Assembly: GCA_009859145.1 (NCBI GenBank)
Contig: VRVR01000060.1
Span: 1 to 64,000 of the forward strand
Direction of reading: 5' to 3'
Length of the DNA: 64,000 bases
Source: Andalucia godoyi And28
Lineage: Eukaryota > Protista > Jakobida
Shown here: positions 1 to 54,765 of the stretch, piece by piece
How the letters are laid out: each line of letters opens with the position of its first letter
Numbering within the stretch: position 1 is the first letter of the stretch
Notes under the pieces: model-generated
What the model saw: the letters and a program-made list of their open reading frames with translations, nothing else
What the model was told of the DNA's origin: nothing
Database searches by the model: none
Translations under genes and position numbers: made by a program

Positions 1-68
<68 letters not shown>

Positions 69-234
69 CCCTAACCCTAACCCTAACCCTAACCCTAACC
101 CTAACCCTAACCCTAACCCTAACCCTAACCCTAACCCTAACCCTAACCCTAACCCTAACCCTAACCCTAACCCTAAACCCTAAACCCTAAACCCTAACCC
201 TAAACCCTAAACCCTAAACCCTAACCCTAAACCC
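1..234. repeat. Telomeric repeat array, mixed CCCTAA and CCCTAAA (TTAGGG/TTTAGGG on the minus strand); chromosome end
   Basis: Uninterrupted tandem array from base 1. Bases 1-170 hold 26 hexamers and 2 heptamers; bases 171-231 hold 7 heptamers and 2 hexamers, followed by CCC and unique sequence. Confidence 0.98.
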
Positions 235-3200: not shown

Positions 3201-3339
3201 CCACAGTCCTCAACAAAGCTCCAGAAGGCCAGATCGGCACTGGATTGCTGTCCATCCAACCTCGCGTATAGGACGATGCATTCGAACCATCGTAGTACAC
3301 CCGAGTGCCGTCTTGATCAATATGGGAAGCCAGCGACAT
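214..3339 (-). CDS. Large orphan, predicted alpha-helical protein (1041 aa) whose last codons and stop lie in the telomeric repeat
   Basis: 3.1-kb uninterrupted ATG-initiated ORF. It ends ...FVGFRVRV*, encoded by GGG TTT AGG GTT AGG GTT TAG. No family motif recognised. Confidence 0.85.
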   Translation of the reverse strand: MSLASHIDQDGTRVYYDGSNASSYTRGWMDSNPVPIWPSGALLRTVASKSRACLPALLSMNSMDRFAASTVEAEDDLEILQKAFQAIRRKICEDADPVRCLLVLGHPDPEYLSRDVQVATTVQDELGKQSPQLLRSLFLEVTKDLFADALAISSRNTILLELKKHPFAENCENDGFDVYVKRHKHVRGFLENFSTQGILASVDQQLAQLFLGEQVQYFESFQRRFSETERREIISKSKGLIEQSQVFKMILESEIHPSVLSDSGEDGTRTYVRTPVTVNDVCTSLTDDIRSALSPELSVRHFHEVLRGINTCLRILKRSEKSWLVMKGKEPNEEALSFIASALSDFNAQERELATKFIVDSHWHNQNHYTLDLLEMDVRLPVLRSDSCEDRVLLPAHACPNIAQYMLLRQDDFSTEHVLDVFRTLFGQGVFLDSTHRRDMLQFVEKLLLQGHRRLDSSISSLKDLLSSESNFATEGFLRDDNVFNLYGRLFLVRHVERRFFFASTTAQKENLDNLFLAQYSFLSSVLGVAEIDFVLEDAVLVDQTSMWFGNELYQQAITSIAWTVCLHQFLVAERRLRLKLRARLSWNERVDEEGGGSGQLHFGREFLKETADLSKIDRSMLDRLIEALGVYVFEVDNRYDCYFPYDPEWESRRISSTLQETIIASASKEIAKNLVPILRGCNPSALDRLADIESVEKQRSILTKTLCNLRIQRLRCADRYGIVLPSLDDVHNAEHASKLDTSPLPTSDFVPPSVIYVKQFFYARITSKREIMAKTGTHISLPETEVLSSLLRARPSRTLKQYEEIFRRLFPIAIEKGLLFICKHALGNGRHLIEPIRFSNGFELDRFKGECMNSVNEVFDAGRKRLESVPNLEKSIAAAPFRFELSTIQGEISCNGGLPASLAKIAITKNSALAIPEQSTALVTANSDVKRSLSLFSQRAAVQRIPDRLDEHFQFVRSICPLLLRELARTAFSAVSDCVKLLNPGEIPHLKNLFLNLPNIGGGLLLDLFCDEGFDKDRNLESVCSLSQHLLRFVGFRVRV

Positions 3340-3727: not shown

Positions 3728-6613
3728 ATGAAAGGATCCAAGATGCAAGTACTTGGGGAATGGCTTTCGTTGTACACCCGAGAATCTTCTGCAAGAGCCT
3801 ATGACGAATCACGCCGAAATGCTACAGTTGAACACTTTCGTGAGGCAAGAAGGGACATTGCAAACCATATGCAATCAAGCGGTCGCCTTGGCAGCATTGT
3901 GAACCTCACACCACGCATGGAAGATTTCGAACTGAAGAGATGTGCCTTCCAGGATGAAGGAGAGGCTGCGGAGTGTAAGCTGGGACTCGAACCTCCTGCT
4001 TCTTTTGCTCTTATCCTGGAACGTATTGTCAACTCAATGGTCCATCCTGAGTACTTACAGAAGTTGGTATTTCTGCGGGGTGCGGTGCATGTTCCGAGAA
4101 CTCTTCAACGTCGACTTCGGCGGTCTGTGTATACCTGTTGGGTGGAAAGGCTTGCTCCTTTGCTTGCTATCGACCTCCTAAACACATTGGCTCGGAGACT
4201 GCATATCCGAGGCTGGGCCTTTGAAGAGCTGGACTTATTAATTGCTCGTCTTTTGAATCTGCAGATTCCGAAGCGTCGCTCTCTTGAACGCCATCAAGAA
4301 CAATTCGCGATGCTTGTTGGTTATCGCGAAGACCAGGATCCAAAAGCTGCCCTATGTGATCTGATGAAACGGATTGAAGAGCACTTTTCTCTGATTTTCC
4401 AGTCGCTTGATAACCTCCGGGCGCAGACTGATCAGCAGGAACAAGGACCACAAGCTGAAAACAGGAGAATAGAACGTGAAGAAGCGATGATGTTAATCAA
4501 TCAGGTGAAAGATATCGTGGAGAGCATCCAGGCAAGAGTTCGATTAATGTTTGGAAATCCAATGTTCCGCCTCTTTTCTTTGTTGCAACAGTTGCATGGT
4601 GACTGTAACCAGACGATCTGGCATTCGCCTGAAGATCGAACTTCACGGATCGAGGAGCTTCGTACTTTGGTAAGGTCCACCTGGTTTTCGTTGGACACTG
4701 ATGTCACAGATACTCATCTGGAAGAATTCGCCTCGCATATTCTTCGTTTGCGTGGGCTTGATCTTGGGGATTTACGGACACGAGACCGTCGACTTTTTTT
4801 ACATTCAGTGCTGGCGTCCAATGTTTCCGTTTCGCAGAAACAACAAGTGATTCGTATGTATGCAGCTGCGGGATATGATGTTTCGGCGAAGGATCCGATT
4901 ATTGGACGCGTTGCCGAAGACTTCTTTCCTTTGGCAGAGCGTGCGTCGCTGAGGGCGTCCTTGCAATCCGCATATGAGAATCTTGACGAAAATGCTATGA
5001 AGGCACAAGAGACAATGCGGCAAATGACGGCCGCGATACGGCAACTTTATGAAACACGGGATGGATCTGTAGAAATTGTCCGTAGAAGCAGTGAGATCAT
5101 TTCACGAATTGCGAATTCCCTAGTAGAAAAAGTCTTTCGCACGAGGACCTGGAGCATAGTCTGCGCTCTTGACCGAACTGAAAAGAGCTGGCACAAACAC
5201 GCTGCTTACGTTGCCAGTGGGTTTTGGAAATGCAGGTTGCAGCTACTTTGTCATGAATTGCAAGCACTGCTGTTCAGAGCATTAACACAGTTTCCACTTT
5301 CGAGATTGTGTGAAGCAAGAGAATTCGTCAAGGACCAGTCCATTACTTGGAAGGAGTTCATTGCAAAGAAAATACTGCCTCGCGTCGCAATAGCTTTAGG
5401 ACTTCTGGAATTCAATTGGAGACAGTTGCCATTGATGCTAGTGGGGATCGGTTCTGATGAATTCATAGCTGAGCTGATGTGTGGCCGGATCGAGCTCCCT
5501 TCACAACAAGATGCAGAAAGATTCGATATCCCCGTCGATTCTACTGAGAATTGGAGATTAGTCAGTTACGATGTGGATTCATTTGCATACGATGAGCAGC
5601 TTTGGAAACGTGTAGTATCACAAGCAACTGCGGTAATCGAAGATACCAAAAGCGTGTTTTGGGAACGATCTGTAATATACCCGGTTACCGAGCTTCTCAC
5701 TGCCTCCACGAAAGTATTGGTTGTGAATGAAGAAGTTGATGTTCAGCAAGTCTTTGAACACAGCAAACAAGCATTTCAGAGAGTATCGAAGCCAAGGGAC
5801 GACGAAGTCGAGCGTTGGTTATCCGAATTTGAAGGTATTGAACATCACAGAACCGAGCGAGCAAGCGTTTTGGCCGAAACTTTCGCGAAATTTCTAGGAG
5901 ATCATGCGAATGATCTTCGTCGTCAAGTTGGATACGAGGATTGGATAGATTTGCAGGACGACAGTAATTTGCACTGTTTGTTTTTTGAAGCAATCAACTG
6001 GCAATCTGTTGGGAGATTCTCCAACGCTCAGCCGATTGATTGGATCGTTCATCATTGTGACGATGACGGACTTGAATTCTACTTCCAAATTCTTGGAATC
6101 CGAACGTTCGTTCACGGACCTCTGGAACGCCTTCTGGATCTGTCAATTTCCGGTCCTGTTCTGAACGACCCGAGGCCGTATGTCAAGAATTTCAGAAAAG
6201 CAATTGGGTCAGTCTTCCGAAGATGTATCGCTTCAGCCTTTACAAAATTGCACTTGTCGATTCACTCTAAATTGCATACGATGCATGTTAATGATGCACA
6301 AGTCGAACGAAACCGTGCTACGGAAACCAGTTTCGCACAGATTGAACGCATCATGAACCAGATGCTGGGGATGCGAGTGGTCAATGAAATCTGGAATGGC
6401 TCTAAAGTTGATATGCGTGGACTAAACGTTCCACGGTTGTGCACAGTCTTGAAGGGATGTTTCCTGGAAAATCCGTGCACTGCGGTCAAGAATATCATCG
6501 AAATGTGCGATGAACTTCGATTGCGAGTCAAGCAAGTTCAGAGCATTCGCTCTGCTTGTGAACAGTTTCTCCGGGTATACCATACTACAAACGATCCAAC
6601 TGCGGATAGGTGA
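3728..6613 (+). CDS. Large orphan, predicted alpha-helical/coiled-coil protein (961 aa)
   Basis: 2.9-kb uninterrupted ATG-initiated ORF preceded by a pyrimidine-rich tract. No family motif recognised. Confidence 0.85.
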   Translation: MKGSKMQVLGEWLSLYTRESSARAYDESRRNATVEHFREARRDIANHMQSSGRLGSIVNLTPRMEDFELKRCAFQDEGEAAECKLGLEPPASFALILERIVNSMVHPEYLQKLVFLRGAVHVPRTLQRRLRRSVYTCWVERLAPLLAIDLLNTLARRLHIRGWAFEELDLLIARLLNLQIPKRRSLERHQEQFAMLVGYREDQDPKAALCDLMKRIEEHFSLIFQSLDNLRAQTDQQEQGPQAENRRIEREEAMMLINQVKDIVESIQARVRLMFGNPMFRLFSLLQQLHGDCNQTIWHSPEDRTSRIEELRTLVRSTWFSLDTDVTDTHLEEFASHILRLRGLDLGDLRTRDRRLFLHSVLASNVSVSQKQQVIRMYAAAGYDVSAKDPIIGRVAEDFFPLAERASLRASLQSAYENLDENAMKAQETMRQMTAAIRQLYETRDGSVEIVRRSSEIISRIANSLVEKVFRTRTWSIVCALDRTEKSWHKHAAYVASGFWKCRLQLLCHELQALLFRALTQFPLSRLCEAREFVKDQSITWKEFIAKKILPRVAIALGLLEFNWRQLPLMLVGIGSDEFIAELMCGRIELPSQQDAERFDIPVDSTENWRLVSYDVDSFAYDEQLWKRVVSQATAVIEDTKSVFWERSVIYPVTELLTASTKVLVVNEEVDVQQVFEHSKQAFQRVSKPRDDEVERWLSEFEGIEHHRTERASVLAETFAKFLGDHANDLRRQVGYEDWIDLQDDSNLHCLFFEAINWQSVGRFSNAQPIDWIVHHCDDDGLEFYFQILGIRTFVHGPLERLLDLSISGPVLNDPRPYVKNFRKAIGSVFRRCIASAFTKLHLSIHSKLHTMHVNDAQVERNRATETSFAQIERIMNQMLGMRVVNEIWNGSKVDMRGLNVPRLCTVLKGCFLENPCTAVKNIIEMCDELRLRVKQVQSIRSACEQFLRVYHTTNDPTADR

Positions 6614-8495: not shown

Positions 8496-9473
8496 ATGAT
8501 TAATCCGACAGATGTGACACAGGCCGTTGGCCGCGTGGTGCGGAACAATGACGGGGAGCATCTTGGTACCTGCATTCTTGTTGGTGATGATACAGTCATC
8601 ACAGCTTTGCATGTGGTGGCGAATGAGGATCACTCTAGTTTGTTTGTTGAATTTCCTGCATCCTCCGTCACCAAGCAAGTATGCAGCGCGATGAAAGTTA
8701 ACAATGTTGCTGACATTATTGTTTTGAAGTTGCATACTCCTGTGGACCTAAAACCGGCCGAAATTGGGACGTTGGATAGCGAAGATTCTGACTTTTTCTT
8801 CGCATATTATCTTCCGGGTATTCCTCTTACAGTTGTTAAAGGAACGTTTTGCGAAGGCTCTATTGATCAAAACCTGCTTCATGTTTATTCGTCTGTGCCG
8901 TCTGTCCCGGGGTGTTCAGGAGGCGCTTTCCTGAATTCAAACGGCAAAGTGTTTGCAATGCATCTATCTAGGTCCACAGGCTTGTGTCCGTATATTGGTG
9001 ACAGTGATCGAAAAGCATTGCGACTTATTCCAATTGCAGGAGACATCGATGTTTTGAAATCCCATGCTTGTATTGCTGAGTGCGACAATGCTTATGTTTC
9101 GTCGTCTCAACATGCGTTGACTCATGGTTTAAGATTATTGTGTTTTTGTGATGAAAAGAAACCGGGCATTACTGATGTCATCAAACATTCTGCTAATTGT
9201 CATTGTACGTACTGGGAGATGTTCCCGAGAAATGCTTCTGGCCCAGGGCGTCGCGGAATCCGATTGGTTCTCAATTGTCACCGCATTCTTTTGGATGTGA
9301 ATTTCTGGTTTATGCCAAATCCTCATGATAATCGGAAGTACAACAAATCTCCACAGCAGTTGTATCATAGTGCTGCGACAGTTGTTCTGCGGCAGTTTGC
9401 TTTGGCAGGGAGAATTGAAGAAAGATACACCGTTGAAGAATACGGAGAGAGCTTTACTATAATAAAAGAGTAA
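8496..9473 (+). CDS. Trypsin-like (Trypsin_2-type) serine protease with an uncharacterised ~130-aa C-terminal domain
   Basis: Catalytic triad motifs in order: ITALH (His), ADIIVLKL (Asp), PGCSGGA (Ser), followed by GKVFAMH. No signal peptide. Confidence 0.85.
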   Translation: MINPTDVTQAVGRVVRNNDGEHLGTCILVGDDTVITALHVVANEDHSSLFVEFPASSVTKQVCSAMKVNNVADIIVLKLHTPVDLKPAEIGTLDSEDSDFFFAYYLPGIPLTVVKGTFCEGSIDQNLLHVYSSVPSVPGCSGGAFLNSNGKVFAMHLSRSTGLCPYIGDSDRKALRLIPIAGDIDVLKSHACIAECDNAYVSSSQHALTHGLRLLCFCDEKKPGITDVIKHSANCHCTYWEMFPRNASGPGRRGIRLVLNCHRILLDVNFWFMPNPHDNRKYNKSPQQLYHSAATVVLRQFALAGRIEERYTVEEYGESFTIIKE

Positions 9474-9490: not shown

Positions 9491-10261
9491 TTACACAGAC
9501 ACTTTTGCAAGTAACGATTTCAAGGAATCGTTGAGAAAATCTCCCAAGAATGGAGAGAGTACGGCCAGACACATACCAAAAGCAGGCTTTCCAATCGGAA
9601 TGGATACCGATTCTGCTTCAAGTTTTATCGGAGTGGCTCTGACGATTGGAAGATCAGACACAATAACTCGAATGTTTTTCTTCGCAGAAGACTCTTTGTT
9701 GGTGGAAGACTCGTCTTTAAGAAACGGAGATTCAGCAACACGGTAAAAAAATCGAACAGGGATCGCATCCTTGGGAAGAGCAGATTCTATCTGCGTTTTC
9801 AGCTCCTGGAACGACTCCACATTGCATTCGAACCACAAAACTTCTGTGCCGAGTAAACGTTGCAGAATGCTAAACATGCACAAACCTGCTACAACACGAG
9901 GAACAAAAGCAACTACAATGGTCTCAATCCACTGGTCAAATGCAGGTATACGACTTGGTTCAACTGTAGATGTTGAACGATGGTGCTTCCATACGTAGGC
10001 TGAAAGAAGGACCACGGTAACAAAGAAAAAACCGGACATCAAACTTTTCCCCTGGCGATACATGGTAAATACCAAAAAGACGAAAAATAGTATCATGATC
10101 ACCAATGTCGGGAGGAATGTTTCTGGCGTAGACAGTCCGGGCGCTAAAAGTACGATGACAGGCATAACCTGTGATAGAAATACCCGGGAAGTGTATCGTA
10201 CCATGACTCTTTTCGTCTTTACCTTTTCCACCGCATCTGTACGGGCATCGGCACGAGACAT
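9491..10261 (-). CDS. Multi-pass membrane protein with a soluble C-terminal domain
   Basis: ATG at 10261 (MSRADART...) after a pyrimidine tract. About 4 hydrophobic segments (VMPVIVLLAPGL, FLPTLVIMILFFVFLVF, LMSGFFFVTVVLLSAYVW, IVVAFVPRVVAGLCMFSIL). Confidence 0.65.
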   Translation of the reverse strand: MSRADARTDAVEKVKTKRVMVRYTSRVFLSQVMPVIVLLAPGLSTPETFLPTLVIMILFFVFLVFTMYRQGKSLMSGFFFVTVVLLSAYVWKHHRSTSTVEPSRIPAFDQWIETIVVAFVPRVVAGLCMFSILQRLLGTEVLWFECNVESFQELKTQIESALPKDAIPVRFFYRVAESPFLKDESSTNKESSAKKNIRVIVSDLPIVRATPIKLEAESVSIPIGKPAFGMCLAVLSPFLGDFLNDSLKSLLAKVSV

Positions 10262-10448
10262 ACTATCAAACTGTAATGCGGAAGAAAAATCAGATGAACG
10301 AGAGCAATTTAAAAAAGGAAATGAAATTCTGAAAGATGGCGTGAGGAAAACTAAGAACCGACGGAGAGCAAAGAGATGCAAAAATGCCCCGGCATTCGAG
10401 TCACCTCACATTGCCTCATTCAAGTGTAGTTTTTTTTGTACTACTCTA

Positions 10449-10478
10449 TCGAAAAGGCACCTAATCTTGCCCGTTTTT
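10449..10478 (+). repeat. Left TIR of the pogo-like element
   Basis: TCGAAAAGGCACCTAATCTTGCCCGTTTTT matches the reverse complement of 12687-12716 at 27/30 positions. Confidence 0.88.
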
Positions 10479-10731
10479 TTCAGTGTTTTCGCTCTTAGTT
10501 TTTGTTACCTATTTTTCTTTATTTTTCATGCTTTCAAAATATTATCCACGTAAGAGTGTTCAGTTTCGAATGGAGAACAATAATAACATCTCATATGGCA
10601 CATCTGGAGAGTGACAAGGGTTAATTTTGGGCAAATCGTCGGTTTGCGGCCTGGATGGACGACAGCAGCCCAGTGTGCTGGATGCCACCGGTGCCTGTTG
10701 CCTCTGCAACCGGCTGCTGTGGTGCGGGAAC

Positions 10732-12621
10732 TTAGGGCGACGTGCTGCTGCCCTCTCCGCCATTGTAGGAACGGATGTGGATAGCGTTCTGGGGACCAGG
10801 AGCAGTCGAAACGCTTGCACTTCGTGCTGCACCCTGCTGCCGTTTCTGTGCCTTCGCTTCCTTCTCCGCTTTGCGTCGTTTCTCGTCGGCTTCCTTGTTT
10901 CGCATGTAGGCAACTGCTTCCTGAGCAGTGATGCAGAGACTCTTCTTGTTTCCTCGAGTTTTTTTCAGATCCTTTCCTGCACTTGCAGGCAAGACTCCTC
11001 GTTGACGGTTGCGCCGCTGCCTCCGTTTATGTCCCGCTCTTGTGGACCTTTTGCGGCCTGCTTCATCGTTGCTGATGACACTGGCGTCGTCGTCGTCATC
11101 ATCATCGTCGTCGTCATCCGTGTCATCATCCTCGTGACGTTGTGATGCGGTGCTCGATGAATGTGGTTCTGCAGTGTTGCTTCTGTTGTCCCAGAACCGC
11201 ATTTCAGCAGCTTGTTGTGCAGCATGCTCTGCCTCCGAAAACTCTGCTTCAAACACGTTCTTTCGAAGTGGGAACAGCCCTGTGACCTGGAACGCGCGCT
11301 CAACGTGCATGAGAGAGACATTCCTCCGCGCCTTCATCAGGCATTGCGTGTTGACATCGTCTCCCTTCGTTAGACGGAACACCGAACCATCCTGCAGCAA
11401 CACATGTTTCCCGTTCTCAATCCCGTGCTCTCCCATTTCTGCTTCTCATACCGGAACGCATTTTTGACAGTCTTGTAGCACTCGACGTCCAAAGGCTGCA
11501 TTTTGTGGGTGGAGTGCGGGGGAAACGTGACCACTCCACAGCTTCGATCGTTGTGTGGCTGCTGTGTCCGTCCACGATCAGCACGATTCTTGCGTCGCGA
11601 CGCTCAGCGGGCAACTGGGATTTGAGATCCTCCAAGAACTCCACAAAGAGAGCGGAGTCGATCCATCCTTTCTCACTTCGGCCGATTTTCAGTCCTGGAT
11701 CCTTCTTCAAGAGCACATTCTCTGTATATTCCGGTGACAGTGCTGTGTTTGGATACACCAGCATCGGTCGGAATGCTTTTCCAGCGGCCGAGATCGCATT
11801 GATCATTGTCACGTGCTTTCTCTCGGAGCTGACTGTCATCTGCACTCGCTTTGTGCCTCTGGGAGCGAGAACACGCAGCTTGGACTCTTGGTCGCCTTGG
11901 ACACCGGTCTCGGCCATGTTGATGACCCTCCACGCGTCTTCCTGGCTCGCAATTCCGGCTCGCGCATACGCGGATTCCAGATCCCTGAAGAATGCATCGA
12001 CGCTCTCCTTGTTGAATGCGTACTTGTGGGATCGTTCGAGTGCTGAGGGCAGGCGGAGGACGAGAGACGCCAAGCCCTGCTTTTCCATCCGGCGATTGAA
12101 CGCAGGAAGCCAGCATTGTTTTGGATACCGTCGATTTGACGCCATTCCCAGACGAACAGTCTCTCTTCCTTGTCAAGGTGATTGTTCTCGTTCTTCCGGT
12201 ATCGCTCAAGTATTTGGACACCATTTGGACAAAATCCTGCTTCAGAAGGGGCATATTCTTCTGCACTCTGTACGATACATAGTGATGCAGCCGCTTCTCT
12301 TCGTCCGGGCAGAGAACAGACGGCCGTCCTGCTTTCCCAAAGAAGGAAACGACTTCTTCGAGGTGATTCATGTTGATGAACTGGTGCAGCGCTTCCGGGA
12401 TCTTTGTACGTCGTCTTTCCGCTTCCGTTGGCACGTCGTGCACAGTCGTTGAGCTCATCCAGGATCACATCGTAGTAGATGCCCACGTACTTGCGCACGG
12501 TACGCTCAGGAGACTGCAGATCGTGGTACTTGACACCATGAGTAACATGCGCAAGGACGTCCTTCGTGAGCTGCGCGTCCGAATTTGACTCGTTTCGTGT
12601 TGGGGATCGTTTTTTGACCAT
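10732..12621 (-). pseudogene. Frameshifted pogo/Fot1-like transposase (HTH + CENP-B-type HTH + DDE_1)
   Basis: Motifs spread over several frames: GRPSVLCPDEEKRL (HTH), WLPAFNRR, INMAETG (canonical NxDETG with D to A), LIVDGHSSH, FPPHSTHKMQPLDV, AFQVTGLFP, then an acidic/basic tail. At least four frameshifts. Confidence 0.88.
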
Positions 12622-12686
12622 TTTGGTTGAAACTCGTTAAAAATGGCAGGAGAAAAGAAGAAAGCGTGCCAAAACATTTTCTCCAG

Positions 12687-12716
12687 AAAAACCGGCAAGA
12701 ATAGGTGCCTTTACGA
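12687..12716 (-). repeat. Right TIR of the pogo-like element
   Basis: Reverse complement is TCGTAAAGGCACCTATTCTTGCCGGTTTTT, followed by a TA duplication. Confidence 0.88.
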
Positions 12717-12759
12717 TAACCACCGAGAGAAAAAGTCATCACGACGATCTCTGATCAAC

Positions 12760-14145
12760 CTAAACATAACCGCCAGTCTGCAGAACTGTGTAAGCCCAAA
12801 TCACCAGAACAGACACTGGAGCACACACAAGAGACAGAGTTACAAAATTAACAGGCACATATCCACCCAGACGGAATGCCAAAGATCCCTCGTCAGTCAG
12901 CCATTTGAACGCAACTTCCGGGAACTTCGCTCCAAACCCGCAATCTGATACTGAGGAAGGTAAAAAGGCAAGCATTTCGATAAGGATGTGCGCGGATTTT
13001 CTGGAAGATAGGGAAATCTGAAGATATGCGTAAAACAACAAAGTTGTCTGCGTCAGAAGCCCAACGTTGCTGAACCAAACTGCGACTCCTGCTTTTCCTG
13101 CATCACTCGAATGTTCAGCCAGAGTCCAGAAAAGGACCACACACACAACTCCAGAAGGAATCGTAAGGATCAGAATAACCATCGCCCAAAGGCCGAATGC
13201 TGAAGAAATCTTGGCGAAATTGTGGACTACCAGAACTGTCTTGCTCAAAATTTCTATGGTCCGCTCTACTGAATACTCGATCCTCATCTTCATCGAGTGT
13301 TCATGGGCATTCTGCCTATTAATATGCACGAATTGCAGATGAAAATCCATTCTCTTAACCATGTTGCGAACCACAACTTTCAAAAGCTGCACTTCTACAG
13401 CACTCACAGCAAAAAAGAATGAAGAGGCAATCATCCAGAAACTGATATACAAACACATTGGAACGCCGAATTGTAATTCCGACGTTGTCAGATCAACAGG
13501 AACACCAACAGTGAATGCCAATATAATCAACGATAAGAAGAAGAAACGAAGCAGTCCATGTCGTTTAAGTTCCGTGATGAATTGGCGACGACAGTATTCG
13601 CGCAAGTGTTGTTCCATCAATTCTTTGTTCAAAGTCTCCTGGGGCTTTAATACAGGCTCGATGACGTCCGATGATAGAAAAGGATCAGAAAGTGGTTCGC
13701 TTCCATTTTCCAGCAGATATCTACCATCTATGCCTAGAAATTGCATTAGAGAAATGTATGAATTCCAATCTTTGGAGAACCAAGTTTCCCACGACGATAA
13801 AGTGTCAAATGTCAGCATCTGCCGAGCCTTGTAGCACTGATAATAATACATGCAGAGGATGGCAAGATCCAGAGGAAACGCAAACATGCGTGCAAGCGTC
13901 ACAAACCAATTCGAGCGTTGGTCAGCATTTTTGGTAATTACAAAATCGTTGATCGCGAAGTACAATGACAAACCACAACCTCCAACAGCAGATGTAAGAG
14001 ATAGCACAACGAGAAAACGCATGACAGCATTCGGCCATTTCTTGATGCCCACTGAAACCTCGCTGCCACCTTGGACTTCTCCTTCCGAAAAGTTATTCTG
14101 CTTTGCAGCGCGAGTAACTATTGACAGGCGCTCGTCGATGCTCAT
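12760..14145 (-). CDS. Gustatory/odorant-receptor-like 7TM protein (7TMIC/GRL candidate), 461 aa
   Basis: Seven hydrophobic segments with GR-like spacing: long helical loop after TM4 ending in ISSAFG before TM5, long loop after TM6, FRLGGYVPV hairpin, and a terminal helix IWAYTVLQT resembling the GR TM7 motif TYxxxxxQF. Confidence 0.7.
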   Translation of the reverse strand: MSIDERLSIVTRAAKQNNFSEGEVQGGSEVSVGIKKWPNAVMRFLVVLSLTSAVGGCGLSLYFAINDFVITKNADQRSNWFVTLARMFAFPLDLAILCMYYYQCYKARQMLTFDTLSSWETWFSKDWNSYISLMQFLGIDGRYLLENGSEPLSDPFLSSDVIEPVLKPQETLNKELMEQHLREYCRRQFITELKRHGLLRFFFLSLIILAFTVGVPVDLTTSELQFGVPMCLYISFWMIASSFFFAVSAVEVQLLKVVVRNMVKRMDFHLQFVHINRQNAHEHSMKMRIEYSVERTIEILSKTVLVVHNFAKISSAFGLWAMVILILTIPSGVVCVVLFWTLAEHSSDAGKAGVAVWFSNVGLLTQTTLLFYAYLQISLSSRKSAHILIEMLAFLPSSVSDCGFGAKFPEVAFKWLTDEGSLAFRLGGYVPVNFVTLSLVCAPVSVLVIWAYTVLQTGGYV

Positions 14146-14440
14146 TTTTCTTTTGGATTCAGAGAAAGGTTCGAATGGGAAGGCACTCGGATGGGAAGGG
14201 TTAGGCCCCTATGCACAAAATGTAGATGGCGTGGATCACAAGGCTGAAATAGAAGTCAACGATTATGTGAGTGACAGGCAGGAGAAAGTATCATTTGTGA
14301 ACTTGGCTTTGAAAGAGAAATGAGTATTGCTAGAAATGCTCCGATGACCGTTAAATTTCGTGCAGCCCACTTCCAACTCGAACGTGCGGGATGCAAAGAT
14401 GCTTGTACAAAAGCTCAAAAAGGCAACTAAATCGCTAGTA

Positions 14441-14513
14441 CAGTCGCATGGGTGCTCAACTGCAAATCCTCCGGAACCAAAAACAGCACGCTGACACGAC
14501 CAATTGTCAGAGT
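14441..14513 (+). repeat. Left TIR core of the Tc1-like element
   Basis: 73 bp matching the reverse complement of 16354-16426 with 4 mismatches. Confidence 0.95.
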
Positions 14514-14793
14514 CAATCGGTTCAAGTTGAGATATTTTTCCCCCCTCGCCGCCAAGTGAAATTCGCGCGTTCTGCTCTTGGCAAAGATTCTGTAAGCTAA
14601 ATCGAATATTGAACAACTATCATCACCGAAAGGCGACAAAATGTCGCGGACCATCGAATTCGTTATGGATCCCCACATGAACCAGCTGCCGAGCTGTACG
14701 CCTCCTCCGCAGCCATCAGAAGGCCACCAAAGTGGGGCGGTCAATATTCCTGCACAGCAGACCAGTCTGTCAGCGGAGTAGGATCCAATCTTA

Positions 14794-16176
14794 TTGAGAA
14801 GACTCAATTTCATTGATACACCGAGCATTGTGGAATGCTCCCTGGCCAATTACAGAGAGCAAATCGGTGCAAGGAATGCAGTCCTTGGTCAAACTGAGGA
14901 AATTGTGCGGATGCAGGTTGAGAAGCAGCTCCGTGCAATTGAAAGGAATAATCAAAAGAAAATGGATCGCTTTCGAAGAGCCTCCGAAAAACTGCGTCAA
15001 AAGGCCCTGGCGAAGAAAAGATGGTCCTGCCCTATCGGAACCATCTATGCTCTAGCAAAAGATCTCTCCGATCCCAAGCACCCATCGTACGACATTCTTG
15101 CTGTGAAGCACCATATCCCAGGTGGCTGTGCGTATGTGGCACAGTTCAAACGACGACTTCAGCAAGCGGGCTGGGATGCAGCAGTCATTGCAACGAGGGC
15201 GCACGGTGGCAGTCGGCCGCATCCTCACCTGCTCTCTCTTGAAGACAAGCAGCAGGTGGCAATGATTCAAATCGAGCATGGCACGTGGAGCATGAGCCAA
15301 ATCATCCAGAGGTTCGCAGAGATAAACAGCGGAAGGACGTTGAAACATGGCGTTGTTTCCAACGCTCTTGCAGAGGCAGGACTGACATTCAAAAGGCTTC
15401 GTACTATGCCACTGCAAAGGAACAGCGAAGAGAATCGCAGGGCGAGAAGACAGTGGCCAGTCCAGATAGACGGATATCAGTGGGACGAAATCATCTGGGG
15501 CGATGAAATGGGTATGACAAATGTGCATCACCAAACCATGGCGAGGGTATACTCTGGTTGTGACACTTTTATTGAAACACAAGGGATGCGCGGTGCGAAC
15601 CACACAATTGTCGGGTTTTGCTCGAAAGAACTGGGGTTCATCGTCGGCGTTCATTTTGACTCATCCTGCAACCAACACGTGTTTGCAGAATGCATCCGCC
15701 GCCTGAAACATATTGTCACTGCCAGAGGCCCGCAAAAGCGCAGATTGATTGTTCTGGACAATGTCCCGTTCCACAAAACGCAGATGATCAGATTGCTGGA
15801 AGATGAGCATTTCAAGATCGTGTATCTGCCTCCATATTCTCCAGCGTGGAACCCCATTGAACTATGCTGGTCTTGGTTGTCTTGGAAAATTGCTCACTTG
15901 TTGCAAGATGCGGGAAACACTGCACAAGTTGTTGGAAACAGCATCACAATGGCAATTGGAGAAATAATGTTCACAGAACACGGAAAACACGTCGTCGAAC
16001 AGTGTGTGAACCATCGCCACAAAGTCTATCAAATATCGATCCTGAATGACGGTTGGCTGTTTTTTGACAAGATTTCTGAAAGCAACGAAGAATTAGCGGA
16101 GCTCGTTGGAGAGTACAATGCTGTTCATCCTACGGCGCCGCTCGACTTCGGCAGTTTGGGTGTACAGGTGCAGTGA
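14794..16176 (+). CDS. IS630/Tc1-like transposase (HTH + DDE_3, DD33E)
   Basis: IWGDE, LIVLDNVPFH and LPPYSPAWNPIE, with 33 residues between the second D and E. GLTFKR linker. Start uncertain: an in-frame ATG at 14641 is cut off by TAG at 14779-14781, and the first downstream ATG is at 14911. Confidence 0.92.
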   Translation: MRRLNFIDTPSIVECSLANYREQIGARNAVLGQTEEIVRMQVEKQLRAIERNNQKKMDRFRRASEKLRQKALAKKRWSCPIGTIYALAKDLSDPKHPSYDILAVKHHIPGGCAYVAQFKRRLQQAGWDAAVIATRAHGGSRPHPHLLSLEDKQQVAMIQIEHGTWSMSQIIQRFAEINSGRTLKHGVVSNALAEAGLTFKRLRTMPLQRNSEENRRARRQWPVQIDGYQWDEIIWGDEMGMTNVHHQTMARVYSGCDTFIETQGMRGANHTIVGFCSKELGFIVGVHFDSSCNQHVFAECIRRLKHIVTARGPQKRRLIVLDNVPFHKTQMIRLLEDEHFKIVYLPPYSPAWNPIELCWSWLSWKIAHLLQDAGNTAQVVGNSITMAIGEIMFTEHGKHVVEQCVNHRHKVYQISILNDGWLFFDKISESNEELAELVGEYNAVHPTAPLDFGSLGVQVQ

Positions 16177-16353
16177 CGTCTCATGCAACGTTGCGCACGC
16201 TCCGGCAGGATATGCAGATCGCGTTGCGAAGCGCATGTCTAAGCGAAAACGCCTCAGCCAGATTCACATGATGTTTTGCTGATGAGACGGAGCAAAGTAA
16301 ACAGACAACGCCAAACAAAAAAGAAAAGAAAAGATGTCAATTTGAGCATCGGA

Positions 16354-16426
16354 ACTCTGGCAATTGGTCGTGCCAGTGTGCTGTTTTTGGTTCCGGGGGA
16401 TTTGCAGTTGAGCACCCATGCGACTG
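16354..16426 (-). repeat. Right TIR core of the Tc1-like element
   Basis: Ends ...CCCATGCGACTG followed by TA. Confidence 0.95.
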
Positions 16427-16713
16427 TACGATCAAACCGATGGTTGCGGAAACAAATTGCGCCCGAATCAAGTGCAGCATGCCGATCCATGTCTGTTCCG
16501 GTCACAGAAATGCCGGTCCTGCTTCTATCGGAGGTTGTTGCTTTCACAATGCATTGGAACCGTGGGACAATTTTTTGAAAAGCAAGGCTATTGTCAGGGC
16601 ATCCTTTCCATTGCGAAGTCGAGCAGTTTCTCTGGAGATTTCTGCCAATCACAATTCTTTCTTCTTCAATCTGATTTTCTTTATTTTGGTTGGTTCTTCA
16701 TACAATATTAACC

Positions 16714-19521
16714 ATGGTTCTTCGTATATTACTTGAATGGATTATACTGTTGACAACTGTTTTTTGTCTGTCTTCTTGTCGTTTGTATGACATGCAGAGT
16801 CCGACTGTTGTTTCATTGCAGCAGGAATGTGATGTGACTGTTCCCCGTGGTTGTGCTGCTATATTTTCAGCACAGCAGAGCGTTGATGATTCTCTGTTTT
16901 ACACCAACGATTTTTTGGGGTATGATTGGCATGGTGGATTCAGTGTCATGACGTGGTTCCTAACTGTTGACCGAGATGTCCCACATTCCGTCATTGATGG
17001 CGGTGGAGCATTTAGCATTCATTCATATTTGCGTTCCGATTCTTTAGTTTATTGGGTTGCTTCTTTGAACTGTCAGTCGGAAGACGAAAGTGCCATCTGT
17101 ACCGACCAAATTGGATATCATTTTAATGATTGGCATCACATTGCCATGTCTTTTGACGGTACTTTCCGACGTAGTTATATGGATGGTCATTTGATTGCTT
17201 CCCCAACTGTGCTTGCACAGCCCACGTCTAATACTTCTTCACCGTTTTCGCTGGGTGAAACGCAAGTAAGCGAAAAGTTCGCAGACACACGAATTTACTC
17301 GCGTGTACTTTCTGACGACGAAATAAGACTCGTTGCGACTCGGTCCGCGTCTTTGCCGCTCGAGTACTCCGATGGATTAATTGCTTGGCATGACTTTCGT
17401 GATGTGATGCATATGGGTGCAAATCATGCGTATCTTGCTTGCAATGGTACTTTCATCATGGGGAGCATGCTGCCGTCTCGTTACTTTCTGATTGGAAATC
17501 CATTTGTTATTACGTTGACAGGGCAAGGTTTTCTACTGGGTGACATTGGAGTTGATCTACAGGCTCCCAATGCATCTTCACCTGCTCTTTCTGCTTCTTC
17601 GATATCTGTTCTGAATGATACAACAATGACTGCTCTATTTCCTTCTGTCTCTGCATGTGGATCCTTTGACATAATTGGTCAGGTCAACGGTGGATACTGT
17701 GCAAGCCAAGCAGGTGTCACTGCGATTTCGATCGGAATTGACATTTCTGCTGTAATTCCGTCGAAGATAGCATGATCGAACGTGCTGAAAGGACAGCCTT
17801 CTGTCCAGTTTGTCGCAAGCCAGTGTTTCAGTTCTTTTGCACTGTTGCCAACTGAAATATTCTGCAATTTTTCTGTCAGCAGCCCTCATGGTTTGCTTTC
17901 CTATTTCTCGTCTCCTCTGACTTCGATTTCTCCAAATTCACTGACATGCAATGTTCCCTTGTCTTTGATCAATGCCCTTCGAGCTTATGGTGGCAATGTT
18001 TCGACAATCGAGACTTGGTTGGTAGTGAATGCTGCCACTTCCGCATTTTCGGTAGTTTCCAACATCTTACAGATTCAAACTGTCTGTTCTGATTTTGTTG
18101 TGCAATCCGTCTGGCCCCTGCAACTGACTACCAGTGGTGGCAGCGTGACGTTTTTCGGAACCGATTTCACCCAAGATCTGACTTGTCTATTCGATAGCAT
18201 GCCAACGGGTCCTCCTGCAGTGTTGAATTCCTCTGCAGCAGTCTGTGAATTCCCTCCTTCTACTCCTCACTTGGGAATTGCAGGACTTTCGCGATTCTAC
18301 GAAAATTCATCTTTGTTCACGATCAACGTTGTCCCTGGTCCTGCCGATCCTATGCTCACTTTTATGCAGTTCGCATCGTGCTCGGACAAACTTCGTTGTC
18401 CGGTTTGTGAAATGTCGGACTTCGCTTTTGGATTTCGGGATATATATCAGAATCCCACATCGGCCGACGGAATTACCATGTCCCTTAGCCTCCTGCCAGC
18501 GGTAGGGTTTTTAATGATTACGGATCCTGAGTTTCGTACTGTTCGTTTTCAAACGAATTTTTCTGCTGTTGCATTTTACGAGTTGGATTTTTACGTGAAT
18601 CAGGCACGATTCATGAGTTTGTTTCTGAACACTGAAGATCCTTCTTGGATGCGTGTGACCTATGTGGAGCCTTCAGCAATACCTACGTTTAGGGGATACT
18701 CCGTCCTTCCACAGACAATCATCGTTTGGTTTCAATCACACTTAACACCTTGCAGTCGAAGCGGTGTCGCATACTGCGTGATCGATTCTATATCCAAAAT
18801 GCCTGGACGGCTTGCCTTTGACACCTCTACCAACACCGGCATGATTACGTGCGGATTGTCAGCTGGCATTTTGTTGCCTGGTACCATATCTGTCTCAGCT
18901 TCCATCGGATCCATCCAAGCCATTGGAAACGCCGGATCCTTACAAGGTACGGAAATTGTCTCCATTGATAGAATTCAGCCTTCCCATGCCCCAGTTGCGA
19001 CAAATGGTTCTGTGGTAATCGCTGTTTTTGGTACTGGTTTTTCGTCTTGGCTCCTCCCTTCTCCCGGCGGCTTGCTGTGCCGATTTGGTAATGACATTTC
19101 CTTCCCCGTTGTGTTTGTCGATCACGTTTCTGCTGTCTGCCTTGTGCCACTGCTTCTAGCCGATACAGCTCTTCTTCCATACACGGTAGACGTTACCCTT
19201 GTTTGGAATGACCACCTCATCACTTTCGGAGGAAATGCCACTTTCACGTACGACGTGCTGCCTCACCACGGTTGCCTCTCCAAGTGCTCTTCACATGCAG
19301 TCTGCGATGGAGAAACGGGATCTTGCGTGTGTGAAGGTGGGTACATCGGATCCACTTGCGACATTCCGCTTGTTGCAATTGTCATTGTGCTTGGGGTCAT
19401 TACCCGTCTGTGCTTCGCCACCATCATCATTTTATTCATCATGATCTTGCGTCAAAAACGCCTGCAACTTCTCTCAGACAATGCCGAGCGATCGCCTCTT
19501 GTCTCTCAGACAGTTCAGTAA
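16714..19521 (+). pseudogene. Type I surface receptor (signal peptide, LamG, IPT/TIG repeats, EGF-like, TM) split by one in-frame TGA; pseudogene or recoded gene
   Basis: ORFs 16690-17775 and 17782-19521 share a frame and are separated only by TGA at 17773-17775. LamG-like WHHIAMSFDG..YMDG, IPT-like repeats, EGF CSSHAVCDGETGSCVCEGGYIGSTC, C-terminal TM helix and short tail. Confidence 0.75.
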
Positions 19522-20334: not shown

Positions 20335-21609
20335 TTATCTCAAGATTAAGTGAAGTTCTCTTAGCAACCTCCTCCTTTCGCTGTTGCGCAGAGAGGGAAA
20401 TTCGTCTCCAAACAACTGACGCAAAAGATTCACAATCTGCGGATTCATGAAGAGCGGTGGCATCGAAGAAGAGAGGCCACATAGAGCAACAGGATTCTGA
20501 TTGTTAAATCTCTGGTATTCAGTGATAGTGCGCTGAAATACTCCATCCATCGTGAGGTACGTATCACTTCTGGCTATACGCAATAGCGCCTTGGATAAGG
20601 TGACTTCTGTTGCTGTTTGGCCCAACGAGCATGAAAATAAAAGTTGAACGTTATGAAGGTCGAGAATAACACTGGGGCGTTGTCCCACACGACATGCGTC
20701 AATTACAATTCTCAGCACTGGGGCATTTCTTCGTCTGATCGTTACGATCGTCTCCTCTCTTTTTCTCTTCAATTTGGCAAGCCTTTTCTTCGCTTTGGAT
20801 CTTTCTTCTTCGCTTGCAATCCTTCGAATCCTTTCTTTCTCCATATCAATTTCGCGCGTCAAATTAGGACCCAATCGTCGTTGGATGAATGCATCAAGCC
20901 TGGTCGCAAACTTTTGGCAAAGATCCTCGATATTCACGTTCTGCCCATCCGATCCCAGAATAGATGTCTCGCCATTTTCACACTTGCCATGACTGCTGAT
21001 CATAAAGATACCATCTCTCTCTTTCTCATCCAGAAACATTGCATCAAGAAGACTGTTGAAGTGTAATTCAATCTGGCTTGCGTCTTGATTGAGTTTAATG
21101 ACGATTTGGTTTTCATCCAATCCAAAACGTTCCAAGAACTTTTTATAGTTCTTTTTTTCACTTTTGTAGTTTGGAAGGCGGTTTTGCTCACTTTGGAATC
21201 TGCCATTCGATATTATCACAGCAGCCGGGCGACTTTGGAAAGCAAGGCGCTCGTCACGGGCATCAATAAAATCGAGAATTGGTAGCCTTCTCATCGCGTC
21301 ACAAAGATCGGCTCTTTCCTCCATGTCACAACACTTGAAAACTCTTTGAAAGTATGCCACTACTCTATCTAAAATAAAATTCTGGAACAATATTGAGTTG
21401 TTTGTTTCTGAGAGAAGGAAGCTAATCACGGCAAAATGAGCAGTAATCTGATTTTGTGCAAATAGACGACCATTCTCGTTTGAGTGGAACAAACTTTGTC
21501 GAAGATCAGTCGTGCTTTTCCAAGTCAGCGAAGTCCTAATACGATCTTTTGTAAGAAAGAGCAGGCCTGCGTTGTTTCCACAATGGAAAAATGGAAGTTC
21601 AACATCCAT
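20335..21609 (-). CDS. Caspase-like cysteine peptidase (clan CD, C14) with a coiled-coil insertion
   Basis: AAVIISNGRF first strand, MISSHG (catalytic His), IVIDACR (catalytic Cys), LLFSCSLGQTA. About 125-aa N-terminal extension. Confidence 0.78.
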   Translation of the reverse strand: MDVELPFFHCGNNAGLLFLTKDRIRTSLTWKSTTDLRQSLFHSNENGRLFAQNQITAHFAVISFLLSETNNSILFQNFILDRVVAYFQRVFKCCDMEERADLCDAMRRLPILDFIDARDERLAFQSRPAAVIISNGRFQSEQNRLPNYKSEKKNYKKFLERFGLDENQIVIKLNQDASQIELHFNSLLDAMFLDEKERDGIFMISSHGKCENGETSILGSDGQNVNIEDLCQKFATRLDAFIQRRLGPNLTREIDMEKERIRRIASEEERSKAKKRLAKLKRKREETIVTIRRRNAPVLRIVIDACRVGQRPSVILDLHNVQLLFSCSLGQTATEVTLSKALLRIARSDTYLTMDGVFQRTITEYQRFNNQNPVALCGLSSSMPPLFMNPQIVNLLRQLFGDEFPSLRNSERRRLLRELHLILR

Positions 21610-47870: not shown

Positions 47871-48087
47871 ATCCACCACAACACCAACTGTTCGTGAGGA
47901 ATAAAATGCGCCTGTTTGCTGCAACCTCCAATTTCTGTTTTACGTCTTGAAACCAAATTCCAACCGACTCTTTAGCGGAGGAGTGCACTTCGGCTTTTCG
48001 TTGTTTTCGTTTGTTCGATTGTTTTTCGTGTTTTCCAATTTATCCATTCAAAAATTTCTTCTTGCCAACCATTCCTTATTTCCCAAC

Positions 48088-54625: not shown

Positions 54626-54765
54626 AGAGGATGCAGCCAAATATTTTAGGAATGTAAATTTTAAGAAGAACGAAATAACAGAAGACAGAGTAAAGATTGG
54701 AAAGAAAAGACCAGGGAATCAACATTTGTGATTCATGTGAGTCGCGATCCGTACCCACTCAGCTG

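What the first reader, a model, noticed from the sequence alone, without database searches (positions are those of the whole stretch)
12760..14145. Gustatory-receptor-like seven-TM ion channel candidate in a protist subtelomere
Seen: a 7-TM hydropathy pattern with long loops after TM4 and TM6, AFG before TM5, FRLGGYVPV, and a final helix with W-x5-Q. Established: insect GR/OR channels have this topology, an F-x-x-GG-F hairpin and a TM7 TY-x5-QF motif, and divergent GRLs are known from some unicellular eukaryotes and plants (DUF3537). Inference: a new divergent member, with an unusually long (~95 aa) loop after TM2, and a possible chemosensory channel.
Basis: partly seen in the sequence, partly recalled or inferred. 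Interest (0 to 1): 0.7.

Follow-up and report, generated by a model that had tools for sequence, protein, structure and literature searches.

The report
Orphan seven-helix membrane protein gene
An intact gene near a chromosome end of the protist Andalucia godoyi encodes a seven-helix membrane protein laid out like insect taste-receptor channels, but neither sequence statistics nor structure prediction could show that it belongs to that family.

Summary
There is an intact 461-aa ORF at 12760-14145 (-). It has seven hydrophobic segments, six strong and one weak. The loops and motifs sit where stated, and the window starts with a (CCCTAA)37 telomere. The organism is the jakobid Andalucia godoyi.

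The protein is an orphan. An exhaustive HMMER search of 1.84 billion representatives found only its own truncated public gene model (140 aa) and one A. godoyi paralog, ANDGO_04166 (47% identity).

The layout meets the non-sequence criteria used for gustatory-receptor-like (GRL/7TMIC) proteins: length, seven TMs, a predicted cytoplasmic N-terminus, and long inner with short outer loops. The FRLGGYVPVNF motif matches the GRL TM7a-TM7b linker at the correct position (16 bits, P about 0.003).

Homology is not shown. Pfam, a GRL HMM, hhalign and a colinear block test are all negative. The TM7 motif is absent in register. Out-of-register motif matches of equal or greater strength occur. The paralog does not keep the linker motif. 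AlphaFold2 failed twice (pLDDT 34 and 40), so the fold test could not be done.

I judge it a plausible but unproven divergent 7TMIC, with probability about 0.4. The gene lies between two DNA transposons.

The parts
12760..14145 (-). Complete intronless CDS, 461 aa plus stop. Orphan 7-TM membrane protein; the public gene model covers only residues 322-461.
   Evidence: No canonical in-frame intron in the IL1 region.
13960..14025 (-). TM1 (aa 41-62), preceded by a 40-aa predicted cytoplasmic N-terminus with 5 K+R
13843..13908 (-). TM2 (aa 80-101)
13555..13842 (-). Unusually long predicted cytoplasmic loop IL1 (aa 102-197, 11 K+R). It contains KELMEQHLREYCR (174-186), which gives an out-of-register 19-bit match to the GRL pre-TM5 motif.
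13489..13554 (-). TM3 (aa 198-219)
13390..13461 (-). TM4 (aa 229-252), after a 9-aa outer loop with no K or R
13195..13389 (-). IL2 (aa 253-317, 10 K+R). The low-confidence models make it helical next to TM4 (to about 266-279) and before TM5 (293-316). It ends in AFG (316-318).
13009..13194 (-). TM5 - EL3 - TM6 hairpin (aa 318-379). This is the part best conserved with paralog ANDGO_04166 (61%, 71% and 60% identity, against 27-42% in the other loops and TM4). TM6 is polar and only weakly hydrophobic.
12850..13008 (-). IL3 (aa 380-432, 5 K+R). Candidate TM6 extension (380-399) and candidate TM7a helix (407-419).
   Evidence: secondary structure taken from a low-confidence model
12844..12879 (-). 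AFRLGGYVPVNF (aa 423-434). Matches the GRL TM7a-TM7b linker motif (compare TtraGRL1 GFRVGGSVLITF).
   Evidence: 16 bits, best position in the protein, P about 0.003 against shuffles. Not exceptional in the all-window dot plot.
12778..12849 (-). TM7 (aa 433-456), containing W450-x5-Q456. A 5-aa tail follows.
14438..16429 (+). Flanking Tc1/mariner DNA transposon, 293 bp upstream of the start codon. It has 101-nt terminal inverted repeats and an intact 460-aa DDE_3 transposase ORF (14794-16176).
10447..12718 (-). Flanking pogo-like (DDE_1) transposon, 41 bp downstream of the stop codon. It has 32-nt terminal inverted repeats. The transposase is broken into overlapping frames.
1..230 (.). Telomere repeat (CCCTAA)37 at the end of the window

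Best explanation
Shown: an intact, intronless gene of Andalucia godoyi encodes a 461-aa polytopic membrane protein. It belongs to a tiny family restricted to that lineage, with one detectable paralog.

Predicted: seven helices, N-terminus inside, C-terminus outside, three long cytoplasmic loops and very short outer loops.

Inferred, and my preferred reading: it is a very divergent member of the seven-transmembrane ion channel (7TMIC / gustatory-receptor-like) superfamily. Under this reading, the cytoplasmic extensions of TM4, TM5 and TM6 plus a TM7a helix (about 407-419) form the 'anchor' that holds four subunits together. AFRLGGYVPV is the TM7a-TM7b linker. TM7b (433-456, with Q456 near the outer end) lines a central cation pore. 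The conserved polar TM5-EL3-TM6 hairpin contributes to an externally accessible gating or ligand site.

None of the channel steps is shown.
For: The gene is real. It is a 461-codon ORF. Its GC1>GC3>GC2 pattern resembles neighbouring genes. It has a paralog at 47% identity with mosaic conservation that peaks in TM5-EL3-TM6.

The architecture meets Benton 2020 criteria ii-v. Length is 461 aa. There are 7 hydrophobic segments. K+R counts are 31 inside against 3 outside. Inner loops are 96/65/53 aa and outer loops 17/9/14 aa, with a 6-aa outer C-tail.

The GRL linker PSSM scores best at residue 423. The score is 15.8-16.1 bits, within the self-score range of eukaryotic GRLs (14-22; these include the scored sequence). 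It is reached by 0.1-0.3% of whole-protein shuffles and by 0 of 127,924 six-frame positions in the rest of the window. It remains the top position when Thecamonas is left out, P about 0.02.

phmmer aligns residues 304-444 in register with TtraGRL1 393-523, from TM5 to TM7. It aligns the TM5 region with TtraGRL2, including F-G-x-W and I-P. Only 50/3000 and 8/3000 architecture-preserving decoys reach these scores.

The secondary structure of the low-confidence models shows helix 407-419, a break, then helix 437-457. It also shows long helices flanking TM4, TM5 and TM6.

No other family claims the protein: Pfam gives no hit at E<=1 and PDB sequences give nothing.

7TMICs are already known in the same supergroup, in kinetoplastids, and are typically undetectable by sequence.
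Against: There is no profile-level similarity. The GRL HMM gives 0.9 bits with an out-of-register alignment. hhalign gives probability 0.7%.

The colinear block-chain statistic gives z=0.8 (P about 0.2). Leave-clade-out known GRLs give z=3.0-6.5, with one at 1.6.

In an all-windows dot plot, the linker match (16.0 bits) is below the chance expectation for the maximum (16.6 +/- 1.3). Stronger hits are out of register, for example 19 bits for the pre-TM5 H..LC motif placed in IL1.

The linker match comes from protist GRLs only. With animal or plant sequences alone it vanishes.

In register with the linker, the TM7 motif positions read V-L...T-V, 0 of 4. W-x5-Q needs a 3-residue shift.

The paralog has ARRICARQPDN in place of AFRLGGYVPVN and lacks most of TM7, although it looks truncated or degenerate.

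The seventh helix (TM6) is only weakly hydrophobic.

Both AlphaFold2 runs failed (pLDDT 34.5 and 40.5). Foldseek matches were noise.

Selection bias applies: the locus was chosen because it carries these motifs.

Confidence: 0.4

Rival explanations
1. It is a functional, lineage-specific multi-pass membrane protein with a different fold that has not been described or recognised. It could be a transporter, a scaffold or another receptor type. Under this reading the resemblance to 7TMICs is limited to generic features: hairpins of helices, long inner loops and a Gly-rich turn before the last helix.
For: All statistically controlled whole-length tests for GRL similarity are negative. Motif matches of the same or greater strength occur out of register. 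The TM7 motif is absent in register. The 96-aa IL1 with a long helix running into TM3 is not a 7TMIC feature. The best-conserved element is TM5-EL3-TM6. In the trimmed GRL alignment the most recognisable conserved blocks are instead the pre-TM5 motif and the linker/TM7 region. The family is undetectable outside A. godoyi.
Against: No alternative family gives any signal. The full set of topological features (N-in, 7 spans, three long inner loops, minimal outer loops, 6-aa outer tail) is what 7TMICs show. It is unlike GPCRs, which are N-out, or PAQRs, which as far as I know have short loops. The linker motif sits exactly where the family has it, and there is a marginal in-register pairwise signal to TtraGRL1/2.
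Confidence: 0.4
2. It is a decaying or non-functional subtelomeric ORF. It would be a relic or a recently arisen gene stranded between two transposons. Under this reading it is not expressed as the 461-aa protein, so its apparent features have no present function.
For: The gene sits in a 1.7-kb gap between two DNA transposons. There are only 41 bp between its stop codon and a pogo-like TIR, and 293 bp between its start codon and a Tc1/mariner TIR. The public annotation calls only the last 140 codons. The single paralog is truncated at both ends and degenerate at its C-terminus. The published A. godoyi paper describes short, poorly assembled subtelomeric scaffolds that contain mainly transposon/viral-like sequence and were left out of the main assembly (PMC7050145). 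Codon-usage scoring cannot discriminate frames here.
Against: The reading frame is fully open for 461 codons, with a start codon in an A-rich context. The hydrophobic segments and the charge distribution are coherent along the entire length. Uneven conservation with the paralog (71% in EL3 against 27% in IL3) is more like constraint or gene conversion than uniform decay.
Confidence: 0.15

Closest known systems
Thecamonas trahens GRL1/GRL2 (unicellular gustatory-receptor-like proteins; Benton et al. 2020, PMC7746228)
   Same: They share 7 TMs, a predicted N-in topology, and long inner with short outer loops. The linker is GFRVGGSVLITF in TtraGRL1 and AFRLGGYVPVNF here, with 6 of 12 residues identical and no gaps. 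The TM5 start is FGPWLTCIFAVQIPLVAICLV in TtraGRL1 and FGLWAMVILILTIPSGVVCVV here. phmmer aligns TM5 to TM7 in register.
   Different: Scores are only about 5 bits, with decoy P of 0.003-0.017 before correction for 10 targets. There is no similarity in TM1-TM4. IL1 is far longer here. TM7b is about 3 residues longer, and the C-terminal motif differs.
Insect Orco/OR and GR channels (7tm_6/7tm_7; structures 6C70, 7LIC, BmGr9)
   Same: Overall length and predicted topology agree. Long IL2 and IL3, a very short extracellular C-terminus and a Gln near the outer end of the last helix are also shared.
   Different: Pfam gives no hit at E<=1. A linker PSSM built from animal sequences alone gives no signal. 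TY...QF is absent in register. The fold is not verified.
Kinetoplastid 7TMICs (Leishmania/Trypanosoma GRL1; Benton and Himmel 2023, PMC9998090)
   Same: They come from the same eukaryotic supergroup (Discoba). They are a lineage-restricted clade that was found by structure only, which shows that 7TMICs can be invisible to sequence searches.
   Different: They carry an N-terminal MORN-repeat domain and are 700-740 aa long. Their C-terminal linker (…LPCVFLFPITPF…) is unlike the one here. I made no formal profile comparison.
Plant and green-algal DUF3537 proteins
   Same: 7 TMs, N-in topology and long intracellular loops.
   Different: A linker PSSM from these sequences gives no match (-0.6 bits). 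Pfam DUF3537 does not hit.
ANDGO_04166 (EukProt EP00762_Andalucia_godoyi_P002979, 'hypothetical protein')
   Same: It is a true homolog: E=2.7e-35, with 47% identity over residues 224-395. TIPSGVVCVV and AEHSSxxGKAGVAVWFSN are nearly identical.
   Different: It is only 222 aa. It lacks TM1-TM3, the linker motif and most of TM7. It is probably a fragment or a pseudogene.

Membership tests
7TMIC / GRL superfamily | Significant sequence or profile similarity to a known GR, OR, GRL or DUF3537 protein (criterion i of Benton 2020) | tested here: not met
   Pfam gives 0 families at E<=1. An HMM from the 25-sequence GRL alignment gives 0.9 bits, out of register. hhalign gives probability 0.7%. The block-chain test gives z=0.8, against 3.0-6.5 for five of six left-out known GRLs and 1.6 for TtraGRL4. 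There is only a marginal pairwise signal to TtraGRL1/2, with decoy P of 0.017 and 0.003. The weaker clause of the criterion, 'no significant similarity to other families', is satisfied.
7TMIC / GRL superfamily | Length about 350-500 aa | tested here: met
   461 aa
7TMIC / GRL superfamily | Seven predicted transmembrane helices | tested here: met
   There are six strong Kyte-Doolittle peaks and one weaker polar segment at 355-379. TMHMM, DeepTMHMM and TOPCONS were not available, so the seventh span is the weak point.
7TMIC / GRL superfamily | Intracellular N-terminus (the inverse of GPCR topology) | tested here: met
   Positive-inside rule: 31 K+R in the N-terminus plus loops 2, 4 and 6, against 3 in loops 1, 3 and 5 plus the C-tail. 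This is a prediction, not an experiment.
7TMIC / GRL superfamily | Intracellular loops longer than extracellular loops | tested here: met
   IL1-3 are 96, 65 and 53 aa. EL1-3 are 17, 9 and 14 aa.
7TMIC / GRL superfamily | TM7 motif (T/S)Yhhhhh(Q/K/E)(F/L/M), called 'diagnostic but not definitive' | tested here: not met
   In register with the linker, at N433+13/+14/+20/+21 as in the animal GRLs, the residues are V446, L447, T453 and V454: 0 of 4. With a 3-residue shift they are I449, W450, Q456 and T457, where only Q matches and W is an aromatic substitute.
7TMIC / GRL superfamily | Conserved TM7a-TM7b linker, G-[FIW]-[RTKS]-[VIL]-[GY]-G-x(0,1)-h-x-[IVL]-[TND] | tested here: inconclusive
   AFRLGGYVPVNF at 423-434 is the best position in the protein, at 15.8-16.1 bits with P of 0.001-0.003. 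Without Thecamonas P is 0.02. With animal or plant sequences only it is not significant. It is not above the chance maximum when all profile windows are scanned. The paralog does not keep it.
7TMIC / GRL superfamily | Fold: characteristic TM packing, long TM4-TM6 projections forming an anchor domain, TM7 split into 7a and 7b (Benton and Himmel 2023) | not testable with these tools
   AlphaFold2 gave mean pLDDT 34.5 and pTM 0.25 with the 2-sequence alignment. With the single sequence it gave 40.5 and 0.29. The best Foldseek PDB match had E=1.1 and TM<0.2, which is noise. No deeper alignment can be built.
7TMIC / GRL superfamily | Tetrameric assembly and ligand-gated cation conductance | not testable with these tools
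   This needs multimer modelling on a confident monomer, and electrophysiology.
GPCR-type 7TM receptors | Extracellular N-terminus, cytoplasmic C-terminal tail and family signatures | tested here: not met
   The charge distribution predicts N-in and C-out, with a 6-aa outer tail. No 7tm Pfam family hits at E<=1.
PAQR / adiponectin-receptor-like (N-in 7TM) | Match to the HlyIII Pfam family, with short loops | tested here: not met
   There is no Pfam hit at E<=1. The loops of 53-96 aa are unlike PAQRs; that comparison rests on my own knowledge of the family.

The most novel reading that the evidence does not exclude
The gene founds a jakobid-specific clade of 7TMIC (gustatory-receptor-like) ion channels. 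It would be the second 7TMIC lineage in Discoba after the kinetoplastid one. It would retain a residual sequence link (the linker and the start of TM5) to apusomonad and chromerid GRLs. Structure-based screens would have missed it because public gene models are truncated to 140 and 222 aa. A subtelomeric, transposon-rich location would then echo the rapid turnover of chemoreceptor families in animals.
Probability: 0.4. Interest if true: 0.55.

Novelty: new member of a known kind. Interest (0 to 1): 0.33.

Why it matters
7TMICs are the insect odorant and taste receptor channels. Their deep origin is still debated. In Discoba, kinetoplastids are the only lineage that the papers read here report as having them, and those are known by structure alone.

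A jakobid member would add a data point near the proposed root of eukaryotes. That would be more useful still if it keeps a sequence motif shared with Thecamonas and Vitrella GRLs. A. godoyi is a free-living, culturable protist with a compact 20-Mb genome, so the protein's function could be studied there.

The case also has a practical lesson. The public models of this family are fragments, so proteome-wide structure screens would not have seen it.

If the protein is not a 7TMIC, it is simply one more orphan membrane protein in a transposon-rich subtelomere, of little general interest.

Tried and rejected
1. Word-indexed homolog search with the protein: nothing.
2. Exact-sequence contig look-ups for the candidate, two neighbouring ORFs, P0001 and P0002: none on record. 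No paralog DNA or extra context could be obtained.
3. Pfam (E<=1) and PDB sequence search (E<=10): no meaningful hit.
4. tblastn of the protein against the window: no second copy.
5. Rfam on the window: nothing.
6. AlphaFold2 twice, with the 2-sequence alignment and with the single sequence: pLDDT 34.5 and 40.5, with TM5 and TM6 modelled as beta strands. Foldseek against the PDB returned only noise. I did not run Foldseek on the other model or on the viral library, because the models are unusable.
7. I considered aligning the candidate with known GRLs and giving that alignment to AlphaFold2. I rejected this because it is circular: the fold would follow the alignment.
8. GRL HMM, C-terminal sub-HMMs and hhalign: negative.
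9. I tried to deepen the Thecamonas-type GRL profile with a database search. It returned only TtraGRL1 and TtraGRL2.
10. Internal repeat between the TM hairpins: none.
11. Retained in-frame intron as an explanation for the 96-aa IL1: no GT..AG interval with a canonical extended donor.
12. Codon-usage scoring: too weak in this genome to separate frames.
13. Kinetoplastid GRL sequences were read but only inspected by eye. I made no formal profile comparison with them.

Full report
WHAT IS THERE

The coordinates hold an uninterrupted ORF, 12760..14145 on the minus strand. It runs from ATG to stop and encodes 461 aa. The window starts with 37 CCCTAA repeats at 1-230, so the gene lies about 12.5 kb from a chromosome end.

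An exhaustive HMMER scan of 1.84 billion representative proteins returned two hits. P0001 is 140 aa and 100% identical to residues 322-461. P0002 is 222 aa and 47% identical over residues 224-395. Both come from EukProt. P0002 is EP00762_Andalucia_godoyi_P002979 / ANDGO_04166, annotated 'hypothetical protein'. P0001 is listed without an accession, which is how the window's own products are listed.

The organism is therefore the jakobid Andalucia godoyi. Its published genome is about 20 Mb, compact and mostly intronless. [quoted passage not shown] The public model of this locus is a C-terminal fragment of the ORF seen here.

Kyte-Doolittle scanning gives six strong hydrophobic segments: 41-62, 80-101, 198-219, 229-252, 318-340 and 433-455. 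A seventh, weaker and polar segment lies at about 355-379.

There are 96 aa after TM2, 65 aa after TM4 and 53 aa after TM6. The alternate loops are 17, 9 and 14 aa, and the tail is 6 aa.

Lys plus Arg number 31 in the N-terminus and the long loops, against 3 in the short loops and the tail. The positive-inside rule therefore predicts N-in and C-out, the inverse of GPCRs.

AFG (316-318), FRLGGYVPV (424-432) and W450-x5-Q456 are all present.

CONTEXT

The gene sits in a 1.7-kb gap between two DNA transposons.

- A Tc1/mariner element at 14438-16429 has 101-nt TIRs and an intact DDE_3 transposase.
- A pogo-like DDE_1 element at 10447-12718 has 32-nt TIRs and a transposase split over several frames.

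Only 41 bp separate the stop codon from the pogo TIR. The window holds no second copy of the gene. No canonical in-frame intron could explain the long IL1.

IS IT A GUSTATORY-RECEPTOR-LIKE 7TMIC?

Benton et al. 2020 retained unicellular GRL candidates on five criteria (PMC7746228):

- (i) sequence similarity to known members, or no significant similarity to other families;
- (ii) a length of 350-500 aa;
- (iii) seven TMs;
- (iv) an intracellular N-terminus;
- (v) inner loops longer than outer loops.

They also inspected a TM7 motif, (T/S)Yhhhhh(Q/K/E)(F/L/M), which they call 'diagnostic but not definitive'. Benton and Himmel 2023 added the fold criteria: TM packing, an anchor domain formed by long TM4-6, and a split TM7 (PMC9998090).

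Criteria ii-v are met here. Criterion i is not.

- Pfam gives nothing at E<=1.
- PDB sequences give nothing.
- An HMM built from the authors' own 25-sequence trimmed alignment scores 0.9 bits, with an out-of-register alignment.
- hhalign gives a probability of 0.7%.

LOCAL SIMILARITIES

I built a PSSM from the 11 alignment columns of the TM7a-TM7b linker, allowing one optional inserted residue. Its best score in the candidate falls exactly at 423 (AFRLGGYVPVNF; compare TtraGRL1 GFRVGGSVLITF).

- The score is 15.8-16.1 bits, within the range of family self-scores (which include the scored sequence).
- It is reached by 0.1-0.3% of whole-protein shuffles.
- It is reached by 0 of 127,924 six-frame positions elsewhere in the window.
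- It remains the top position without Thecamonas (P about 0.02).
- It disappears with animal-only or plant-only profiles.

phmmer against ten full-length unicellular GRLs aligns residues 304-444 with TtraGRL1 393-523. This is in register from TM5 to TM7. It also aligns the TM5 start with TtraGRL2. Architecture-preserving decoys reach these scores in 50/3000 and 8/3000 cases. That is marginal after correction for ten targets.

CONTROLS THAT TEMPER THE LOCAL MATCHES

A colinear block-chain statistic over the whole alignment gives z=0.8 for the candidate. Known GRLs scored against profiles lacking their own clade give z=3.0-6.5, with TtraGRL4 at 1.6.

A profile-by-sequence dot plot shows that the linker hit (16.0 bits) is no higher than the chance global maximum (16.6 +/- 1.3). 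Stronger hits are out of register. One is a 19-bit match of the GRL pre-TM5 'H..LC' motif to KELMEQHLREYCR in IL1.

The paralog has ARRICARQPDN in place of the linker and lacks most of TM7, although it looks truncated and degenerate.

The linker match is therefore meaningful only as a pre-specified test at a pre-specified place. It also carries the selection bias of how the locus was chosen.

THE FOLD COULD NOT BE TESTED

AlphaFold2 gave mean pLDDT 34.5 and pTM 0.25 with the two-sequence alignment. With the single sequence it gave 40.5 and 0.29. Foldseek against the PDB returned noise (best E=1.1).

No deeper alignment can be made. The family is undetectable outside A. godoyi, and the Thecamonas-type GRLs are themselves lineage-restricted.

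Only local secondary structure from the low-confidence models is mildly suggestive. Long helices flank TM4, TM5 and TM6. A helix at 407-419 is followed by a break and then a helix at 437-457, as expected for TM7a and TM7b.

WHAT THE PARALOG ADDS

Identity is 61%, 71% and 60% in TM5, EL3 and TM6. It is 27-42% in TM4, IL2 and IL3. The best-kept element of the family is therefore the polar outer hairpin TIPSGVVCVV...AEHSSxxGKAGVAVWFSNxGLxTQ. This points to a constrained, externally facing functional site, or to gene conversion. No internal repeat was found.

VERDICT

The GRL/7TMIC reading is the most specific hypothesis consistent with the architecture, the linker motif and the weak in-register similarity to Thecamonas GRLs. 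I put it at about 0.4.

An unrelated orphan fold is about equally likely (0.4). A non-functional relic is less likely (0.15).

Even if true, it would be a new divergent member of a superfamily already reported across the tree of life (Himmel et al. preprint). Interest is therefore moderate.

Noticed in passing
window 12760-13182 versus 12760-14145: The public (EukProt) protein for this locus is only the last 140 codons, starting at M322, although the frame is open for 461 codons. The only paralog model (222 aa) is also a fragment. Truncated models would hide this family from proteome-wide structure screens.
   Followed up: partly
window 14438-16429: An apparently complete Tc1/mariner element: 101-nt terminal inverted repeats (86% complementary) around an intact 460-aa DDE_3 transposase ORF. 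It may still be active.
   Followed up: partly
window 10447-12718: A pogo-like (DDE_1) element with 32-nt terminal inverted repeats. Its transposase is split over at least four overlapping minus-strand ORFs, so it is frameshifted and degenerate.
   Followed up: partly
window 29749-32733 (repeats 30217-31047): A 994-aa protein with an N-terminal WD40 propeller and a C-terminal protein kinase. The WD40 units are encoded by about 7 tandem 120-nt repeats at 81% identity. This recalls the hypervariable WD40 arrays of fungal NWD/HNWD self/non-self genes.
   Followed up: no
window 33899-41647: A single 2582-aa ORF combines an SF1 helicase (AAA_11/AAA_12) with several AAA+ ATPase modules and lid domains. 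It is an unusual giant NTPase fusion.
   Followed up: no
window 8496-9473, 20335-21609, 53672-54640: A trypsin-like peptidase, a caspase-domain (metacaspase-like) protein and an AIG1/GIMAP-like GTPase lie in the same subtelomeric stretch as the WD40-kinase and the giant NTPase. Together they resemble a cluster of conflict or immunity-type genes.
   Followed up: no
window 214-3339 and 3728-6613: Two long ORFs (1041 and 961 aa) directly next to the telomere have no Pfam match and no hydrophobic segments. They are unknown telomere-adjacent proteins.
   Followed up: no
window 47947-49110 and 9491-10381: Two further ORFs have multiple hydrophobic segments and no Pfam match: 387 aa with about 5 segments, and 296 aa with 4 segments. 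They may be other orphan membrane proteins in this subtelomere.
   Followed up: no
window 60957-63977 (runs off the window end) and 17782-19521: These are large EGF/ephrin-receptor-like, Cys-rich proteins. The first also has a PQQ-type beta-propeller and ends in a hydrophobic segment (residues 988-1006). Both look like surface or adhesion proteins.
   Followed up: no
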